A stretch of DNA of 64,000 nucleotides from Macrostomum lignano (taxonomy: Eukaryota). The stretch spans positions 53,950-117,949 of the forward strand of contig NIVC01003134.1 in assembly GCA_002269645.1 (NCBI GenBank). Direction: 5' to 3'. This document shows, piece by piece, positions 2,630 through 63,304 of this stretch. Within the stretch, counting starts at the first letter, position 1. Every line of letters begins with the position of its first letter. The notes beneath the pieces are model-generated. The model was not told where the DNA came from and did no database searches. It was given only the letters and a program-made list of their open reading frames with translations. The position numbers and the translations under genes are program-made.

Positions 2630-5445
2630 CTAGTGCAATAATCCTTGGTTTATTAATAGCAATAATCCTTGATTAATCAAGTGCAATAATCCTTGGTTTA
2701 TCAAGTGCAATAATCCTTGGTTTATCAAGTGCAGTAATCTTTGGCTTATCAAGTGCAATAATCCTTGGTTTATCAAGTGCAATAATCCTTTGTTTATCAA
2801 GTGCAATAATCCTTGGTTTATCAAGTGCAATAATCCTTGGTTTATTAAGTGCAATAATCCTTGGTTTATCAAGTGCAATAATCCTTGGTTTATCTAGCGC
2901 AGTAATCCTTGGCTTATCAGGTGCAATAATCCTTGGTTTATCAAGTGCAATATTTGTTTATCAAGTGCAATAATCCTTGGTTTATCAAGTGAAATAATCC
3001 TTGGTTTATCAACTGCAATAATCCTTGGCTTATCAACTGCAATAATCCTTGGTTTATCAAGCGCAGTAATCTTTGGCCTATCAAGTGCAATAATCCTTGG
3101 TTTATCAAGTGCAGTAATCCTTGGCCTATCAAGTGCAATAATCCTTGGTTTATCAAGTGCAATAATCCTTGGTTTATCAAGTGCAATAATCCTTGGTTTA
3201 TCAAGTGCAATAATCCTTGGCTTATCAACTGCAATAATCCTTGGTTTATCAAGTGCAATAGTCCTTGGTTTATCAAGCGCAGTAATCCTTGGCCTATCAA
3301 GTGCAATAATCCTTGGCTTATCAAGTGCAATAATCCTTGGTTTATCAAGTGCAACAATCCTTGGTTTATCAAGTGCAGTAATCCTTGGCCTATCAAGTGC
3401 AATAATCCTTGGTTTGCCAAGAGCAATAATCCTTAGTTTATCGAGTGCAGTAATCCTTAGTTTTCCAAGTGCAGTAATCCTTGGTTTATTAAGAGCAATA
3501 ATCCTTGGCTTATCGAGTGCAGTAATCCTTGGTTTGCCAAGAGCAATAATCCTTGGTTTATCAGATGCAATAATCCTTGGCTTATCAACTGCAATAATCC
3601 TTGGTTTATCAGATGCAATAATCCTTGGCTTATCAACTGCAATAATCCTTGGTTTATCAAGTGCAATAATCCTTGGTTTATCAAGCGCAGTAATCTTTGG
3701 CCTATCAAGTGCAATAATCCTTGGTTTATCAAGTGCAATAATCCTTGGTTTATCAAGTGCAATAATCTTTGGTTTATCAAGCGCAGTAATCTTTGGCCTA
3801 TCAAGTGCAATAATCCTTGGTTTATCAAGTGCAATAATCCTTGGCTTATCAAGTGCAATAATCCTTGGTTTATCAAGCGCAGTAATCTTTGGCCTATCAA
3901 GTGCAATAATCCTTGGTTTATCAAGTGCAGTAATCCTTGGCCTATCAAGTGCAATAATCCTTGGTTTATCAAGTGCAATAGTCTTTGGTTTATCGAGTGC
4001 AGTAATCCTTAGTTTTCCAAGTGCAGTAATCCTTGGTTTATTAAGAGCAATAATCCTTGGTTTATCGAGTGCAGTAGTCCTTGGTTTATTAATATCAATA
4101 ATCCTTGAATAATCCAGTGCATTAATCCTTGGCTTATCAAGTGCAACATTCTTTACTATCAAGTGCAATAATCCATGGCTTATCAAGTGCGATAATCCTT
4201 GGCTTATCAAGTGCAATAATCCTTGGTTTATCAAGTGCAATAATCCTTTGTTTATCAAGTGCAATAATCCATGGCTTATCAAGTGCAATAATCCTTGGCT
4301 TATCAAGTGCAATAATCCTTGGTTTATCAAGTGCAATAATCCTTGGCTTATCAAGTGCAATAATCCTTGGTTTATCAAGCGCAGTAATCTTTGGCCTATC
4401 AAGTGCAATAATCCTTGGTTTATCAAGTGCAGTAATCCTTGGCCTATCAAGTGCAATAATCCTTGGTTTATCAAGTGCAATAGTCTTTGGTTTATCGAGT
4501 GCAGTAATCCTTAGTTTTCCAAGTGCAGTAATCCTTGGTTTATTAAGAGCAATAATCCTTGGTTTATCGAGTGCAGTAGTCCTTGGTTTATTAATATCAA
4601 TAATCCTTGAATAATCCAGTGCATTAATCCTTGGCTTATCAAGTGCAACATTCTTTACTATCAAGTGCAATAATCCATGGCTTATCAAGTGCAATAATCC
4701 TTGGCTTATCAAGTGCAATAATCCTTGGTTTATCAAGTGCAATAATCATTTGTTTATCAAGTGCAATAATCCTTTGCTTATCAAGTGCAATAATCCTTTG
4801 TTTATCAAGTGCAATAATCCTTGGTTTATCAAGCGCAGTAATCCTTGGCTTATCAAGTGCAATAATCCTTGGTTTATCAAGTGCAATAATCCTTGGTTTA
4901 TCAAGCGCAGTAATCTTTGGCCTATCAAGTGCAATAGTCCTTGGTTTATCAAGTGCAGTAATCCTTGGTTTTCCAAGTGCAATAATCCTTGGCTTCTTGA
5001 GTGCAGTAATCCTTGGTTTGCCAAGAGCAATAGTCCTTGGTTTATCGAGTGCAGTAATCCTTGGTTTTCCAAGTGCAGTAATCCTTGGTTTATTAATAGC
5101 AATAATCCTTGGCTTCTTGAGTGCAGTAATCCTTGGTTTGCCAAGAGCAATAGTCCTTGGTTTATCGAGTGCATTAATCCTTGGTTTTCCAAGTGCAATA
5201 ATTCTTGGCTTCTTGAGTGCAGTAATCCTTGGTTTGCCAAGAGCAATAGTCCTTGGTTTATCGAGTGCAGTAATCCTTGGTTTTCCAAGTGCCGTAATCC
5301 TTGGTTTATTAATAGCAATAATCCTTGATTAATCAAGTGCAGTAATCTTTGGTTTGCCAAGAGCAATAGTCCTTGGTTTATCGAGTGCAGTAGTCCTTGG
5401 TTTATTAATAGCAATAATCCTTGGCTTATCGAGTGCAGTAATCTA
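2630..5445. repeat. 24-bp minisatellite (TCAAGTGCAATAATCCTTGGTTTA)n, ~2.8 kb, with higher-order blocks
   Basis: Directly visible; the 8-aa periodicity of all overlapping ORFs (LSSAIILG / MHLINQGL) confirms the 24-bp unit. Confidence 0.95.
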
Positions 5446-10418: not shown

Positions 10419-11936
10419 TGAACGCAAATTAAAAAGCTATATTTATTTCAAGGAAGCCTCTACTGTCAAATGGTTCACGGGTTTATCTGTTAAAATACAC
10501 TTAATAACAGCTTAAATAAGGATTTCAAATCCTTATGGCCTAGAACCTGAAAAGTGTGGAATAATGGCCAAAATATTTTGTTATTGCGTCTGGGTATAAT
10601 TGTATAGTTACAATGACATTTCACAACTAAGTCAACCTGCAGTCACATACAGATCAGATACAATCACTGGCTAATTGGTTAAAAAAAGGTTTTTCCTATC
10701 TCCGTAGTGTAATTTTTATAATATTTTTTCCCTCTAAAATTATACTATTTTTTATTGTACTGTAATCTTTTGGAGGGAAATTGGAGGGGAATTTGCTGGC
10801 AGCCCCAAAAGAAAAAAATGACAAGATCATTGACTTCTACAACCTACACTCAGCAACATTGAAAAGTTTCACCCTAGCGCGCAAAGGGTCAACGTAGACT
10901 TTAGACTCCTGTAAGCTGCTGCTGTCTGCTCCATGTGACTGTTTCATTCGACCTGTCTGGCGTCTATGACTCTGCAAGTTTTTGTCTATGGCCCATGTGC
11001 GTGTTGACGAAATCATCAATCGTCTATGGCACAAGTCTGGCGACAAAAACAAGTTTTGAAACTCTAAATATACACGGCTGGCGCGAGGGTGGAAACTTTT
11101 CAATGTTGCTGAGTGTAATTATAATTCAATACTACAGTGGTTTGGATTTAAAGTGCTATATATAGTGCCTATAGTGGTACATGTAAACTTCGACAGGAAA
11201 CCAGCCTACGGAAAAATCTCCTAGACCCAGTATTATATCCTTTTTAAGTCACTCGCAAAGTTATGTAAGCGTCGAAAACATGCCGAATGTTTGGCTTTGA
11301 ATCGACATCCATTAGCCCGAGGGAAAAGGCTCGACATCGAATCGAGAAGGCAAGCACGTCACGCCTCCTCAAGTCGACAGCTATAAAATATTATTTTGTC
11401 GTTTTTCAAGCAAAAGCGAAACTGCATGCTTAAAATACATGTAAACACGTTTGGGATTGTTGCAGTGTAGGAATTCTGATTGCCCTTTCTTATAATTACC
11501 CCACTACTGTCACCAAGTTGTTGTAGGGGTTCACTTCTATCCCAGCGGTGACACCATGAGGTTAAGTGGTTGTAGGGATTTAAAAAGTTCCTTCTTTTAG
11601 AAATTCCACACAATAACCACAAGTTGTTGTAGGCCTCTGCTCTGTCCTATAAAATCCTACCGTTAACGCCAAGCTGAGCTAATTTCAAATCTACTGTACT
11701 GTGTATTTCTAATCGATTCCGATAATTTTGGCGTTTCCGAGGATAAAGGATTTCCATGCAGCGACGTAGGCTCTATTCTATACTGACGTGCCTTCACGGT
11801 TTACCTACTTTAATTCCAAAGCATTCCCCTAACGCCTACAGTGATGCCTAATTGCCTCTCCTAACCTTAATTTTAGCCTTCACGCTTAGGTCTTGAGTCT
11901 TCACGACTTCTGTTTCTTTCCTACTATACCTGAATC

Positions 11937-12970
<1,034 letters not shown>

Positions 12971-13541
12971 GCTGAATTGCAAATAAATCGTCACCACCTG
13001 CAGAGAAGCTCAAAACATTTTCACCCTGCACTGCATCCCAATCTAGACAAACAAGTCAAAGGCATTAGGCCAGCGAATTACTTCATAGTTAAATATGAAT
13101 CGCATTCGGTGGTAAACACAAACGGGATAAAAACACATGCATTCGCTATGTCAATATTTCAGTCCGTTTTTTGAAAAATTTATGGCTCAGAGACAACCTC
13201 AGACATTGGTGACACATCTGATACAAGCAAGGCCTTAATTTGGGCATTGCACATCATTAACTACTATAGATAGCTTACAGTGTGGGTGACAGACTATGGG
13301 GGGGGCATCGTTTGGGTTCCATTAGCAATATCTGGAGAATCGATAAACTGAAGCTGCTATGCGCGGTCACCCCAAAAAATCGTTGCAATGCCAAAATCCA
13401 TTGGGTTGACTCAAATAAAAGATCTGTGTCATTAGGGAGGCATTGAAGGCTTGATAGCCTTCCCAATGACACATCTCTGCTTAACTAGTCAACTAAACTC
13501 TACTCAATCATCACCACTCAATCACTCACTCAATCAAACAC

Positions 13542-13700
13542 TATAGACTCAAGTCTACTCAGTCATCACCACAACTCTACCCAGACACAGTATAGACTCA
13601 AGTCTACTCAGTCATCACCACAACTCTACTCAAACACTATATAGACTCAAGTCTACTCAGTCATCACCACAACTCTACTCAAACACTATATAGACTCAAG
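13542..13700. repeat. 49-bp tandem repeat, ~3.3 copies
   Basis: TATAGACTC recurs at 13542, 13591, 13640 and 13689. Confidence 0.9.
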
Positions 13701-13950
13701 AAATAAACGCAAACAATACAAGGTGTTCTGCAGTTGATGCTTTTCAAACTTGCAAAGCTTTGCTCATATCTAGTCTATTTGCTCGTGGATTTAAAACTGG
13801 AGGATCGTTAACAGTCCTGATAAGATAAAAGTTTTGCGAGAAGCAAACGAGTTAACAGTTTTCAGATTTTATTTGACTTAAGAAAAGTCTGTCTAAATAT
13901 TCCAACGTGATTCTGGCTTATTCTGATGAGCTCAAACCAATTCAGCTGGC

Positions 13951-14724
13951 TCAGTTGAATGGCGACACGCACTCGCAGAGAACTTTGGAGACAGTTGCAA
14001 AAGCCTCACCTATATCGACTAACTTTTCAAGACTATGATAACGCGCAATAGCCTTCTCGAGGCCTACTCAGAGTGGGCCTTTTCCACTAGGCTCGCCCTC
14101 GTTCCACAGGCTGCCGTTCAGAGCAATATCGCAGGCAACCCAATGCCAGCCTTCTTTCGGGTCCGAACTTTCTACTTTCTTGTAGCCTCCAAGAAAAAAA
14201 GATTTACCAGAACTGCGACGACGGTGAATCTCGTTCACGTGGCTCATCTCGGTAGCGTCCACCACATCGGCCATGATCACCAGGCCGCTCTCCGACTCGC
14301 ACTTCTGTCTGCTCTGCTGCCAGTTGCCAGTCTCATTGAGCAGCTTGTACTTCACTCCGCACAGGTCGTCTCCGTAGCCAGACGGACACAGCGCGCCCGC
14401 CTCGAGTCCCGGCTGCTGCTTCACAAACACCCGGCCTCTCCTGGAGCAGCCGCAGTCCCTCACCGACTTGCTGCACTTGTCGAACACGAACAGCTGGCAC
14501 GGACCGTCAGCCAGGCTGAACGCCTGACAGCGCCGGTCGCTGCTGCACCAGAAGGCGCAGCCGGCCATCGAGGCAACGTCGGGGAGGCTCCGAACGAACT
14601 GGCGGTTGATGCAGAGGCTGCCGTTGATGCTCGAGTACGAAGCCACGTCAGCTGCCTGCGCAACTTTGAGCAGGAAGAGAAAAACAGAGAACTGCTGGGA
14701 GTTGCTCAGCCTCTTTGATGTCAT
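13951..14724 (-). CDS. Secreted PAN/apple + C-type lectin domain protein, intronless, with in-frame TGA at 14068-14070 (218 aa to the first stop; 257 codons if read through); possible pseudogene or recoded gene
   Basis: Hydrophobic N-terminus (FSVFLFLLKVAQA). PAN-type CAFWCSSDRRCQAFSLADGPCQLF. Long-form CTLD CPSGY...C...WQQSRQKC...FFLGG...WHW...WNEGEPS. After the TGA the frame continues VGL...LVDI...VLCECVSPFN* and supplies the terminal lectin strand. AATAAA on the minus strand at 13868-13873. Confidence 0.75.
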
Positions 14725-15404: not shown

Positions 15405-15830
15405 AACACAACACAACACCTCAGCACTCCGCAACAACACAACACCACAGCACTCCACAACAACACAACACCTCAGCACTCCGCAACAACACAACACCTC
15501 AGCACTCCGCAACAACACAACACCTCAGCACTCCACAACAACAACACACCACAGCACTCCACAACAACAACACACCACAGCACTCCACAACAACACAACA
15601 CCTCAGCACTCCGCAACAACACAACACCTCAGCACTCCGCAACAACACACCACCTCAGCACTCCACAACAACACACTACAGCACTCCACAACAACACAAC
15701 ACCTCAGCACTCCGCAACAACACACCACCTCAGCACTCCACAACAACACACTACAGCACTCCACAACAACACACCACCTCAGCACTCCGCAACAACACAC
15801 ACCTGAGCACTCCGCAACAACACAACGCCA
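15405..15830. repeat. ~25-26-bp AC-rich tandem array (AACACAACACCTCAGCACTCCGCAAC)
   Basis: Directly visible, upstream of the lectin gene. Confidence 0.9.
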
Positions 15831-17121: not shown

Positions 17122-52186
<35,065 letters not shown>

Positions 52187-59709: not shown

Positions 59710-60457
59710 GCACCAACAGTCCTCCCGGCAAACTAAATCTGTACAAAAAGTGATCCCAGCCATAAAAAAATGGTACAAGGATAGGACAGGATACCTGATA
59801 CCCTAAGCATGTGCAGGCCAAGGCAGTGAGAGGCATAGTTACAACTTCCTGACTTACTATAGTCGTGAAGTGCTTCCAGCCGAAGCACCAATAAAAATTT
59901 GCCTCGTGCCCGAAGTTCCTCGGCCGCGCACTTGTTTGAAGGGATAACAAGTAGGTCTAGCCCCTTACTCCCTCAGTCTTCCTCTGTATGTTCATATATA
60001 TATATATAGCTCTGATAGAAAGTAAGCGAGATATGCATAGCCAGAAAAGATCCGGTGACCCCTAGCTATCTCCGTTTTACACTCTCTTCCCTTGCACCGT
60101 AAAGCGCATCCGCGATCTACGCTGCTCTCTTGAAGTCACTCTTTCACTCCTCGTACGAGTATGGCCACCACTATATAAGCGCTTTCTGCATTAAGGCAAA
60201 ATTGAAAAGGCAAACCGCTAGAACAAAGTCGGCTGCATTGGGGTGTGTTTTTGGCCCGGGGCACGCTTCATTGCCTCGACATTTATCTCCCTTGGGGAAC
60301 TGATCAGGAGCTAGCAGCTCCTCGCGCAGCTTGGACTGTACTTTCACTGATGGATTATTTGGTTCAATAAAATTTCGTCAACTGAATTAAAACGACGAAG
60401 CTATTGGTTATCATATTTTGACCACTCATTCCTAAGCCCAAGGATAGATACATATCC

Positions 60458-61202
<745 letters not shown>

Positions 61203-62107
61203 GTGGTATAGGTAAGTGCGGATAGGCAGGCTTCCTTCAGTATATTGCATGATATGATATTACAAGATTCTGTATGCGTTGGCTCCAAGCATGCTTGGCA
61301 TGGCGAAACCAATAAGTCCAAGAGACTTTTCTCCAGTAAGATGTACGCTCGTATCTGTGAACCCAACAGCCATGCTTATTTTGCACGCAATTACAAAAAA
61401 ATCAAGCGCTTTCAGATTAAAATATTACGATCATTTCGTTATCTACCTTCTGTATCATAAGTGACAACCTGATGTAATAACATATTAACGTCTTACTGGT
61501 ATCTGTTGCTTCTTGAGCACTTTCAGTTTTTCTTTCAAGCAACTCAGTTTTCTAACTTAAAAGAAAATCATTTCATAGCACTTCGCTAATATAAAAAATA
61601 TGGGCTCTACTTTTTGCTTGTTGCCATGTCCTTCTACATCTCTCATTGTCAGGACTCTAAAGAGATGGTAAATAGCAAAGCCAACAGTGCTGAAGCAGTG
61701 GAGAGAGCGGCAGACCGATGATGGGGGGCAAGTCATGCTTCACCATCCCATCCATACAGACCCGGCCAGATCCCCGCTGAGCTCGCCCTCTCATTGGCTT
61801 TGCTTAGGCAAATTTCCTGCCTCTCCATCCGGCTTTGATTCGTTTCGTGGAAAGAATTGGCAAAAGCCCCGAGGAAAACTGGGCGGGGCTAAAAACAAGA
61901 GCTGGAGAAGCAAACAGGGACGGTCTTGGCTAACATTTGATATCAGCTCTCCTTAATTCGGTACTTCTCCAATTTGATTTATTTCGATTGGGAAAAAGAG
62001 TTTCAAAGAGACGTGCTCCGCTTCTCAATATATTAATACATTATTCCCTAAGAGATTTGCCTTTGGACTTATTGCTACTGCCATACCTTACTCGACATCC
62101 TGAACTC

Positions 62108-63304
62108 ATGCTTGCCGCTACGAAGCGCATCATTCTACTGTCCAACTCGTCCCACGAGTGCGAAAATGCCACCAGATCGAATACGTCACACCTGAACGAC
62201 CTGTTTGGTTTGAAGGCCTACAAGATATTTATGATCTGCTTACCAATGCTCAACTGCGTGTTGAACAGCCTGTGCTGTTCGGTGTTTCGTTGGATGAAGC
62301 CGAACAATCAGTTCAACCGCATCCTCATGTATCTATCCGTTGCCGAGGTCCTTTTTCAGCTGATGTTCGCCTCGCATCAGTTGCTTTTTCTTCTGATGGA
62401 GACCAACCGCCTGGAAATGAGAACTCTTCTAGAAGCTCGGATAGTCGCAGCCAGCATTGTGGTGTCAATCGTGCTGCTGACGGCCTGTCACCTGATTCGC
62501 AACTGGATGGTTGTCATTATCAGCTACTATCGATACTGCTCTGCATCTGTCCCGAGCGTTCGCTCCTGCCTTTTTTCTGGTCATCTGCGTTTGAAAAGTT
62601 GCTGCCTGGTAGCTGTCTGCCTAATGGTTGCCCTGCCTCGCAGCCTGGAGTTCAGCATAGTGGTTTGCTCGTTTGAGAAACAGGTGACTCATATTGACAG
62701 CAACCTGAGTGACACGCAGCTCTATCGGATACTCTACCTGGGACTTATTCTCTTCCTGGCTCAGAATGTTGGTCCGGTGATGCTGCTCCTAGTGTTTAGC
62801 ATCTGCCTGTGCCATATTCTCTACAGGCAGAGACGGTCGCGCAAGTCGATGCAGAGCCGCGATCGAAACTGTCGCGAACGCGGCGAAGGTTTCGAAGGTC
62901 GGCACAGGCATCAGTCTGGCACTAGGCTGGTTATTGTACTGTGCGCTGTGTTTCTCACGTGTGAGATACCGACTCTACTGAAAGTGATCGACCCAATGAG
63001 GACTCGACTGCACCTGCTTGGCTACACAACCAACCTGCTAACCTGCGTTGACTCCACCTTCAACATCCTTGTGTACTACCTGAGCAACCGGGAGTTTAAG
63101 CGCGTCATAAGACGTCGACTACCGTGTTGGCTGAGAGGCAGATCGGCTGATCGAGGGCGGAACCGGACTCCAGATACTGATGGAAGAGCAGCTGTCCCAG
63201 AGATGCCTGCTGAGGCTCATGAAGCTGCTGATTTGGTACCTCTTGCAAGCGTTAGAATTGGTAACACGCGAAGAGAAACGTCAGATATAACCGAAGAGGT
63301 GTGA
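62108..63304 (+). CDS. Intronless class A (rhodopsin-like) GPCR, peptide-receptor/FMRFamide-receptor-like orphan, 398 aa
   Basis: First ATG at 62108. N-terminal sequons NSS/NAT/NTS; seven hydrophobic segments; TM1 N (LNCVLNSL); TM3 RNWMVVIISYYRY (DRY-equivalent); TM4 LMVALPR; TM5 GP; TM6 FLTCEIP; TM7 DSTFNILVYYLSNREFK. Confidence 0.88.
   Translation: MLAATKRIILLSNSSHECENATRSNTSHLNDLFGLKAYKIFMICLPMLNCVLNSLCCSVFRWMKPNNQFNRILMYLSVAEVLFQLMFASHQLLFLLMETNRLEMRTLLEARIVAASIVVSIVLLTACHLIRNWMVVIISYYRYCSASVPSVRSCLFSGHLRLKSCCLVAVCLMVALPRSLEFSIVVCSFEKQVTHIDSNLSDTQLYRILYLGLILFLAQNVGPVMLLLVFSICLCHILYRQRRSRKSMQSRDRNCRERGEGFEGRHRHQSGTRLVIVLCAVFLTCEIPTLLKVIDPMRTRLHLLGYTTNLLTCVDSTFNILVYYLSNREFKRVIRRRLPCWLRGRSADRGRNRTPDTDGRAAVPEMPAEAHEAADLVPLASVRIGNTRRETSDITEEV

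What the first reader, a model, noticed from the sequence alone, without database searches (positions are those of the whole stretch)
13951..14724. In-frame TGA sits exactly at a conserved cysteine of a C-type lectin domain, and the domain continues after it
The annotated ORF stops at ...WNEGEPSGKGPL*. The same frame continues VGLEKAIARYHSLEKLVDIGEAFATVSKVLCECVSPFN*. In CTLDs the residue after EPx...E is Cys2, followed by WND and the terminal F/V-I/L-C-E strand whose Cys4 bonds to Cys1 (here SRQKC). The TGA occupies the Cys2 slot, LVD aligns with WND, and VLCE supplies Cys4, so the 218-aa product could not complete the fold. Cys3, the partner of Cys2, is absent. Options are a recent TGY->TGA nonsense allele or pseudogene, a base-call error, or recoding (selenocysteine or readthrough). 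A Sec-containing secreted lectin would be unusual. However, I found no convincing SECIS before the AATAAA at 13868-13873, and TGA-G is not the classic leaky TGA-C context.
Basis: partly seen in the sequence, partly recalled or inferred. Interest (0 to 1): 0.7.

Follow-up and report, generated by a model that had tools for sequence, protein, structure and literature searches.

The report
Premature stop in flatworm lectin gene
A small secreted lectin-like gene of a Macrostomum-type flatworm carries one premature TGA in a variable surface loop, not at a conserved cysteine, so it is most likely a very young broken copy and not a case of selenocysteine or other recoding.

Summary
The sequence facts hold. 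On the minus strand an ORF (14724..14068, 218 aa) ends at TGA 14070..14068, and the same frame runs 38 more codons to TGA 13953..13951. The product belongs to a Macrostomum-specific family of secreted PAN/apple + C-type-lectin-fold proteins. With the stop masked as X, the AlphaFold model (pLDDT 90.6) is a clear CTLD whose last three strands lie after the TGA.

The key interpretation fails. The TGA is not in the Cys2 slot. Relatives that keep Cys2 place it at window I226/A227, 7-8 residues downstream. The window's subfamily has lost both Cys2 and Cys3. The TGA lies in a 4-5-codon loop extension that 26 of 27 aligned relatives lack, and none of 141 related domains has Cys anywhere in that loop.

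I found no SECIS, leaky stop context, downstream RNA structure, usable intron or productive frameshift. The stop sits at the centre of a 19-nt near-palindrome, which fits a snap-back insertion that created it.

The post-TGA peptide is the most family-like C-terminus of 12 members, so the lesion is very recent. Best reading: a young null allele or nascent pseudogene. An assembly error or read-through cannot be excluded without reads. This is ordinary.

The parts
14068..14724 (-). Open reading frame of 218 codons plus the premature TGA. It has a predicted signal peptide (aa 1-~25), a PAN/apple-like domain and the first three quarters of a CTLD. It is intronless.
   Evidence: homologs
14068..14070 (-). 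In-frame TGA (codon 219), followed by G (TGA-GTA).
14059..14076 (-). CCA CTC TGA GTA GGC CTC: the loop stretch in which 4-5 codons are extra relative to nearly all relatives. The exact boundaries are ambiguous. Removing 12 nt (CTC..CTC repeat) or 15 nt (GGCC..GGCC repeat) gives a family-typical loop length.
14061..14079 (.). 19-nt near-palindrome GGCCCACTC-T-GAGTAGGCC (8 of 9 arm pairs). Its centre is the T of the TGA. The right arm is the reverse complement of the 9 nt just upstream, with one mismatch.
13954..14067 (-). 38 sense codons after the TGA that encode CTLD strands beta3-beta5 and the family C-terminus ...VLCECVSPFN.
13951..13953 (-). TGA at the position where intact relatives (P0002, P0005, P0019) also terminate. 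This is the ancestral stop codon.
14044..14049 (-). Codons I226-A227 (ATT GCG): the true Cys2 column of the CTLD, occupied by hydrophobic residues in this subfamily.
13969..13977 (-). TGC GAG TGC (C250-E251-C252) in the last strand: the Cys4 position plus a family-specific extra Cys.
14299..14301 (-). Cys1 (C142, SRQKCES) in helix alpha1, invariant in the family. It would be left without its partner in the 218-aa product.
14473..14613 (-). PAN/apple-like domain (aa 38-84, Cys-rich).
   Evidence: PAN_4 E=0.017, below cut-off; 1hky PAN domain, E=7.7e-5
13954..14388 (-). CTLD (aa 113-257 of the conceptual full-length product), long form with an N-terminal Cys113-Cys122 hairpin.
13868..13873 (-). 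AATAAA, the likely poly(A) signal, about 80 nt after the ancestral stop.

Best explanation
The gene is a single-exon member of a Macrostomum-restricted family of small secreted proteins: signal peptide, PAN/apple domain, then a C-type-lectin-fold domain. The window comes from a macrostomid other than M. lignano. This copy has one disabling lesion, a TGA in the variable loop between the EPx motif and strand beta3. The TGA lies in a 4-5-codon extension of that loop that nearly all relatives lack. The 218-aa product would lack strands beta3-beta5 and the Cys4 strand, so it could not complete the CTLD (inferred from the fold). The lesion is very young, because everything downstream is intact and is the most family-like C-terminus known. 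The copy is therefore a recent null allele or nascent pseudogene in a birth-and-death gene family. The most economical origin, inferred and not proven, is one snap-back or template-switch insertion of 12-15 nt. It copied the adjoining 9 nt in inverted orientation and created the TGA at the turn. A point nonsense change in a pre-existing longer loop is the alternative origin. The TGA is not a recoded cysteine or selenocysteine codon.
For: The frame, stop and continuation are as described. All named relatives are M. lignano proteins at 30-61% identity. A neighbouring RhoGEF gene is only 53% identical to its best M. lignano hit, so the window is from another species. All seven relatives in alignment A2 run through the site with a gap where the window has PL*V(G)L; five of them continue to the ...CEC[VAL]SPF[NDV] end, while P0001 and P0003 stop short of it. 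In the 28-sequence alignment only P0033 has residues at that place, and it has Leu or Phe, not Cys. In 141 related CTLD domains, 0 have Cys between EP and beta3. Cys2 falls at the I226 column (18 domains) or the A227 column (7 domains). P0014 and P0015 keep ENYAC and MNDC, while the window's subfamily lacks both. The AlphaFold model has pLDDT 90.6 and pTM 0.86, with three strands after X219. The top 50 Foldseek hits are all CTLDs (2vuv TM 0.85, rmsd 2.3). In a leave-one-out HMM of the C-terminal block, the window scores 53.0 bits, the highest of 12 members (the others score 8-35). The near-palindrome centred on the TGA has about 0.009 expected per codon in shuffles. Another family copy, L004, carries three in-frame stops, which shows that copies of this family do decay.
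Against: No reads, transcripts, alleles or close orthologs (>61% identity) exist in any searchable collection. The TGA therefore cannot be shown to be real, polymorphic or untranslated. A perfectly preserved downstream region is also what ongoing translation would produce. The snap-back origin is weakened in three ways. The gene holds two other such palindromes. L004 has a loop extension of the same total length beginning KGP. And 15 of 141 related domains carry 4-6-residue inserts at this loop.
Confidence: 0.72

Rival explanations
1. Assembly, polishing or base-call error: the real genome has a sense codon, or lacks the short extension, and the gene is intact.
For: The downstream 35 aa are the best-scoring C-terminus in the family, as expected for an intact gene. 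There is only one lesion. Published non-lignano Macrostomum genomes are PacBio/canu assemblies polished with Arrow and pilon, with residual haplotype problems (PMC10468722). Whether the window comes from one of them is not known.
Against: Long-read errors are mostly homopolymer indels, not substitutions or a structured 12-15-nt insertion. By a rough prior from general knowledge, young nonsense alleles in expanded gene families outnumber residual substitution errors that create stops.
Confidence: 0.1
2. The stop is decoded: programmed read-through of TGA, or A-to-I editing of UGA to UGG in the small hairpin. The full-length PAN-CTLD protein is made and the downstream codons stay under selection.
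For: The downstream frame is open, homologous and the most consensus-like of the family, and it ends at the ancestral stop. The UGA sits in a short predicted hairpin. The gene is intronless, so classical exon-junction-dependent decay would not remove the mRNA (inference).
Against: The context is TGA-G, not the leaky TGA-C/CUAG type. The 150 nt from 14100 to 13951 fold no better than shuffles (z=+0.29). The hairpin has only 8 base pairs, far shorter than known ADAR substrates (established knowledge). Read-through normally extends a complete protein and does not rescue a domain core. No relative shows a stop here.
Confidence: 0.05
3. The TGA encodes selenocysteine in place of CTLD Cys2.
For: There is an in-frame TGA with conserved sequence after it.
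Against: The TGA is not at the Cys2 column. No relative has Cys at or near it: 0 of 141 domains in the whole loop. The would-be partner Cys3 is absent. No Rfam SECIS appears at E<=10 in 13300..14200. The only loose ATGA..AA..GA match (13767..13727) lies about 100 nt past the AATAAA and folds like shuffled sequence (z=-0.08).
Confidence: 0.01
4. The 218-aa truncated protein is the functional, selected product (PAN domain plus a partial lectin domain) and the downstream homology is a recent leftover.
For: The upstream ORF is intact, with a signal peptide and a complete PAN domain.
Against: The truncation removes three core strands and the Cys4 strand, leaving Cys142 and Cys198 unpaired. No relative ends there. 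An undecayed downstream region argues that there has been no time for any new selective regime.
Confidence: 0.05

Closest known systems
C-type lectin-like domain (CTLD) proteins, e.g. codakine (2vuv), CEL-I (1wmy), DC-SIGN and langerin CRDs
   Same: Same fold: Foldseek TM up to 0.85 and rmsd 2.3 A over about 144 columns. Long-form N-terminal Cys hairpin, Cys1 in alpha1, Cys4 in the last strand, an EPx motif and a (W)xD motif.
   Different: Too divergent for Pfam Lectin_C. The Cys2-Cys3 disulfide is lost in this subfamily. The motifs are EPS and LVD instead of EPN/QPD and WND, so canonical Ca2+/sugar binding is doubtful. There are extra family-specific cysteines (C198, C252). The domain is fused behind a PAN/apple domain. 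This copy is interrupted by a stop.
Macrostomum lignano 'C-type lectin domain-containing' / 'Apple domain-containing' proteins (UniRef A0A1I8GTV8, A0A1I8HTM9, PAA63283.1 and others)
   Same: Same PAN + CTLD architecture, same invariant cysteines and same ...LCECVSPF[ND] C-terminus; 30-61% identity.
   Different: They come from another species. They have no stop and, except for the Logan fragment P0033, no loop extension. The M. lignano genes examined have 1-2 introns, while the window gene has none.
Eukaryotic selenoprotein genes
   Same: An in-frame TGA followed by conserved coding sequence.
   Different: There is no SECIS, no Cys-containing homologs at the position, and the position is a variable loop, not a redox or disulfide site.
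Snap-back / template-switch (quasi-palindrome) insertions, as left by polymerase-theta end joining or replication template switching
   Same: The inserted bases are an inverted copy of the 9 nt immediately upstream, with 3-4-nt direct repeats (CTC or GGCC) at the junctions.
   Different: There is one mismatch in the arm, and no ancestral allele is available to prove an insertion. The resemblance is recalled from established knowledge, not tested.

Membership tests
C-type lectin-like domain (CTLD) | Match to the curated sequence model (Pfam PF00059 Lectin_C) above its gathering score | tested here: not met
   No Lectin_C hit at E<=1 for the 218-aa or the X-masked 257-aa product. None for paralog P0014 at E<=0.01.
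C-type lectin-like domain (CTLD) | CTLD fold (two helices, two sheets, N- and C-terminal strands paired) | tested here: met
   AF2 model pLDDT 90.6. Foldseek against PDB gives 434 hits at E<=1e-3; the top 50 are all CTLDs, best 2vuv with TM 0.85. The family profile hits many PDB CTLDs at 1e-4 to 1e-2.
C-type lectin-like domain (CTLD) | Cys1 (alpha1) and Cys4 (last strand) present | tested here: met
   C142 is invariant and LCEC sits in the last strand. But Cys4 lies after the TGA. The bond itself is not testable here.
C-type lectin-like domain (CTLD) | Cys2 (start of beta3) and Cys3 (after WND) present | tested here: not met
   The window has I226/A227 and no Cys after LVD. P0014/P0015 keep both (ENYAC, MNDC). 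25 of 141 related domains have Cys in these columns.
C-type lectin-like domain (CTLD) | Ca2+/carbohydrate motifs EPN or QPD plus WND | tested here: not met
   The window has EPS and LVD. Paralogs have EPN or QPD with xTD, xVD or xND.
PAN/apple domain | Sequence match to PAN models or solved PAN domains | tested here: inconclusive
   Pfam PAN_4 E=0.017 and PAN_3 E=0.057, both below cut-off. The family profile hits Eimeria MIC5 PAN (1hky) at 7.7e-5. UniRef names P0016 'Apple domain-containing'.
Selenoprotein gene | SECIS element in the 3' UTR | tested here: not met
   No SECIS family at E<=10 in 13300..14200. The single loose pattern match lies beyond the poly(A) signal and has fold z=-0.08.
Selenoprotein gene | Cys in homologs at the TGA position | tested here: not met
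   Gap in 26 of 27 aligned relatives, Leu or Phe in the one with residues there. 0 of 141 domains have Cys anywhere in the loop.
Selenoprotein gene | TGA conserved in orthologs | not testable with these tools
   No sequence closer than 61% identity exists in the collections.
Programmed stop-codon read-through | Leaky context (TGA-C / TGA-CUAG) or a stimulatory downstream structure | tested here: not met
   The context is TGA-GTA. The downstream 150 nt fold with z=+0.29.
Programmed stop-codon read-through | Protein-like conservation after the stop | tested here: inconclusive
   The post-stop peptide scores 53 bits against the family, the best of 12. This is equally expected for a very young nonsense allele. 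No orthologs are available for a dN/dS test.
Pseudogene / null allele | A disabling lesion relative to intact relatives | tested here: met
   The stop lies before three core strands that the five relatives with complete C-termini (P0002, P0004, P0005, P0014, P0015) encode.
Pseudogene / null allele | Further decay (more stops, frameshifts, loss of conserved residues) | tested here: not met
   This is the single lesion. All conserved downstream residues are kept. If it is a pseudogene it is nascent. Contrast L004, which has three stops.
Spliceosomal intron removing the stop | GT..AG interval of workable length that restores the homologous frame | tested here: not met
   Only 21-nt and 24-nt GT..AG intervals keep the whole C-terminus. 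Paralog introns are 105, 294 and about 597 nt, and none lies at this site.

The most novel reading that the evidence does not exclude
The TGA is fixed and decoded, either by efficient read-through or by editing of UGA to UGG in the small hairpin that it centres. A secreted lectin-fold protein would then be made through a stop codon inside its domain core. The unusually well preserved downstream 38 codons would reflect ongoing selection and not youth.
Probability: 0.05. Interest if true: 0.5.

Novelty: new member of a known kind. Interest (0 to 1): 0.12.

Why it matters
It matters little beyond annotation. The locus should be recorded as a disrupted or possibly polymorphic member of a lineage-specific PAN+CTLD family, not as a 218-aa lectin and not as a selenoprotein candidate. 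Two by-products are mildly useful. First, it is a worked example that a stop 'at a conserved Cys' judged by motif spacing can be wrong when the subfamily has lost that disulfide and the loop length varies. Second, this Macrostomum family is invisible to Pfam Lectin_C yet folds as a textbook CTLD. If the TGA proved to be conserved and translated, it would be an unusual case of recoding inside a domain core.

Tried and rejected
1. Pfam scan of the ORF and of the X-masked product: no Lectin_C hit. Membership had to be settled by profile-to-PDB search and by fold.

2. First AlphaFold run on 6 sequences: pLDDT 46, unusable. I repeated it with 28 sequences.

3. GC3 as a sign of decay: 0.75 upstream against 0.47 downstream looked suggestive. 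But GC3 already falls to 0.39-0.5 about 70 codons before the TGA, so I rejected it.

4. Splicing out the stop: only 21- and 24-nt GT..AG intervals preserve the C-terminus. Paralogs have no intron at this site. Rejected.

5. Frameshifting at CTC-TGA: +1 meets TAG at once, and -1 gives a non-homologous peptide (...SRPREGYCALS*), both read directly. The homologous sequence is in frame 0. Rejected.

6. SECIS: Rfam at E<=10, a loose pattern search and folding all found nothing.

7. A second copy of the gene in the window: none found.

8. Exact-sequence look-ups of the window protein, P0001, P0002 and P0017 found no contigs. No allele or close ortholog could be obtained, so dN/dS was not feasible at 50-60% identity.

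9. Shared ancestry of the window's and L004's loop extensions: an NJ tree does not make them sisters. This remains unresolved.

10. Two literature searches found no study of this family.

Full report
**Observation**

On the minus strand an ORF starts at ATG 14724 and ends ...WNEGEPSGKGPL at TGA 14070..14068 (218 aa). The same frame continues VGLEKAIARYHSLEKLVDIGEAFATVSKVLCECVSPFN and stops at TGA 13953..13951. AATAAA lies at 13873..13868. So the sequence facts in the finding are correct.

**What the gene is**

A search of 5.8 billion proteins gave only five relatives at 49-58% identity. Three are Macrostomum lignano proteins that UniRef names 'C-type lectin domain-containing', and two are unnamed Logan contigs. 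A profile search added two more distant M. lignano paralogs, P0014 and P0015. A profile search of 1.84 billion representatives gave 919 hits at E<=1e-3. The close ones are again M. lignano proteins of 230-280 aa, or multi-unit proteins such as P0016.

The neighbouring RhoGEF+PH ORF (18128..19843, minus strand) has its best hit in M. lignano at only 53% identity. The window therefore comes from a macrostomid other than M. lignano.

Pfam does not see Lectin_C at E<=1. It sees only sub-threshold PAN_4 and PAN_3 at aa 49-86. A family profile does hit a solved PAN domain (1hky, 7.7e-5) and many solved CTLDs (1e-4 to 1e-2).

An AlphaFold model of the conceptual product, with X at the stop and 28 sequences in the alignment, has pLDDT 90.6 and pTM 0.86. 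Foldseek against the PDB returns 434 matches at E<=1e-3. The top 50 are all CTLDs, and the best is codakine 2vuv (TM 0.85, rmsd 2.3 A).

The architecture is a predicted signal peptide, a PAN/apple-like domain (aa 38-84) and a long-form CTLD (aa 113-257). Strands 223-228, 235-239 and 245-253 of the model all lie after residue 219, the TGA.

**Where the TGA lies**

All seven relatives run through this point and show a gap of 4-6 columns where the window has PL*V(G)L. Five of them continue to ...LCEC[VAL]SPF[NDV]; P0001 and P0003 break off earlier. tblastn of the relatives crosses the TGA in one same-frame HSP, and two of them, P0002 and P0005, reach 13954.

The residue counts between EP and LCEC are 36 in the window, 31 in L001, 31 in L002 and 27 in P0002.

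P0014 and P0015 keep both canonical cysteines (S-ENYAC-RW and LMNDC). These align with window EKAIA-RY and with the position just after LVD. Two independent profile-to-PDB alignments place the Cys2 of codakine (NEDC) and of mosGCTL-1 (NEDC) on window I226.

Among 141 CTLD domain instances taken from the best 150 representatives:
- 18 have Cys at the I226 column and 7 at the A227 column.
- None has Cys anywhere between the EP motif and the beta3 column.

The Cys2 slot is therefore 14049..14044, which is 7-8 residues downstream of the TGA. The window's subfamily has lost Cys2 and Cys3 together. The claim that the TGA occupies the Cys2 slot is refuted, and the reason to think of selenocysteine goes with it.

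**Tests of recoding and rescue**

- **SECIS:** Rfam finds no SECIS, and nothing else credible, at E<=10 in 13300..14200. Nothing in the whole window reaches a gathering score. A loose ATGA..AA..GA pattern has one minus-strand match at 13767..13727. That is about 100 nt past the AATAAA, and it folds like shuffled sequence (z=-0.08).
- **Stop context and structure:** The base after the stop is G. The 150 nt from 14100 to 13951 fold no better than shuffles (z=+0.29).
- **Splicing:** Only 21-nt and 24-nt GT..AG intervals would remove the stop and keep the whole C-terminus. The M. lignano paralog genes have introns of 105, 294 and about 597 nt at other positions, and a continuous last exon across this site.
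- **Frameshifting:** A +1 shift at CTC-TGA meets TAG at once. A -1 shift gives non-homologous sequence (read).

**Age of the lesion**

I scored each member's C-terminal block against a leave-one-out HMM of the others. The window's post-TGA 35 residues score 53.0 bits, the highest of 12 members; the others score 8-35. Every conserved downstream residue is kept: the D of LVD, LCEC and SPF. The frame ends at the ancestral stop. There is no second lesion.

The lower GC3 after the stop (0.47 against 0.75) is not informative, because GC3 already drops about 70 codons upstream. The stop is therefore very recent, or it is an artefact, or it is decoded.

**Origin of the lesion**

The 19 nt GGCCCACTC-T-GAGTAGGCC (14079..14061) form a near-palindrome with 8 of 9 arm pairs. 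The T of the TGA is at its centre. Such a palindrome is expected to cover a given codon about 0.009 times in shuffles, although the gene contains two others.

The right arm is the inverted copy of the 9 nt just upstream, with one mismatch. The junctions carry short direct repeats (CTC or GGCC). Taking out 12 or 15 nt leaves a loop of 6 or 5 residues, inside the family range of 4-6. This is the signature expected of a snap-back or template-switch insertion that created the stop in one step. That comparison rests on established knowledge and is an inference.

Three observations count against certainty:
- L004, which holds P0033, has an extension of the same total length beginning KGP, with Leu or Phe where the window has TGA.
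- 15 of 141 related domains carry 4-6-residue inserts at this loop.
- An NJ tree does not make the window and L004 sisters, so the two extensions may be independent.

A point nonsense change in a pre-existing longer loop therefore remains possible.

**Context**

L004 carries three in-frame TAA codons in an otherwise collinear homolog. This shows that copies of this family do decay. Published non-lignano Macrostomum genomes come from inbred lines and from polished PacBio assemblies (PMC10468722). Both conditions make fixed private null alleles plausible, and residual errors somewhat less so. Whether the window is from one of those assemblies is not known.

**Verdict**

This is a real premature TGA in a variable CTLD loop of a lineage-specific PAN+CTLD gene.
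- Most likely it is a very young null allele or nascent pseudogene (0.72).
- An assembly error (0.10), a functional truncated product (0.05) and read-through or editing (0.05) cannot be excluded without reads or orthologs.
- Selenocysteine is effectively excluded (0.01).

The finding is ordinary. Its main value is to correct the annotation and the Cys2 assignment.

Noticed in passing
L004:1-640 (Logan SRR31628425 contig): A family homolog with three in-frame TAA codons in one otherwise collinear frame: after YSG, at the Cys1 position (QKW*AE), and at MA*V. It still ends with LCECVSPFY followed by TGA TAG, so it looks like a decayed copy. All three stops sit in G-TAA-(C/G) contexts. Its EP-to-beta3 loop is 4 aa longer than in its nearest relatives and contains the 8-nt perfect palindrome TCCTAGGA.
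   Followed up: partly
window 13951-14724 versus L003:3001-4240 and L005:6001-7386: The window gene is intronless from ATG to the ancestral stop. M. lignano paralogs have introns at non-matching positions: P0014 has two, of 105 and 294 nt, and P0019 has one of about 597 nt. There is no poly(A) tract or other retrocopy hallmark downstream of the window gene.
   Followed up: partly
window 13954-14388 (-); P0014: This Macrostomum PAN+CTLD family is invisible to Pfam Lectin_C. That includes P0014, which keeps all four canonical cysteines. Yet the AlphaFold model is a textbook CTLD. The window copy has EPS and LVD in place of EPN/QPD and WND.
   Followed up: yes
P0016 (M. lignano, 3072 aa), residues about 420-1430: It contains at least three complete tandem PAN+CTLD units of this family plus one PAN-only unit. 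The small secreted form and a giant multi-unit form therefore coexist.
   Followed up: no
window 11934-12970, 13492-13700, 15408-15826: The gene is flanked by large tandem arrays: (ATCT)x259, a 49-nt unit x4 directly after the 3' end of the gene, and a 26-nt unit x16 upstream. The 49-nt unit contains CTGAGTAG, the same 8-mer as around the premature stop. That is probably chance, since about 2 are expected in 64 kb.
   Followed up: partly
window 2894-5414, 20158-23350, 24216-26456, 29988-30446, 32614-33222, 35049-36182, 37960-38869, 44302-47675, 60401-61366: Much of the window is satellite or minisatellite DNA that gives long spurious ORFs on both strands. No Rfam family reaches its gathering score anywhere in the window.
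   Followed up: no
window 18128-19843 (-): A GC-rich (0.65) ORF encoding RhoGEF (DH) + PH domains, FARP-like. Its best relative is an M. lignano protein at only 53% identity over a quarter of the query. I used this to infer that the window is not from M. lignano.
   Followed up: partly
window 61937-63304 (+): A 455-codon ORF with several hydrophobic stretches, possibly a multi-pass membrane protein. It has no Pfam match at E<=0.01.
   Followed up: no
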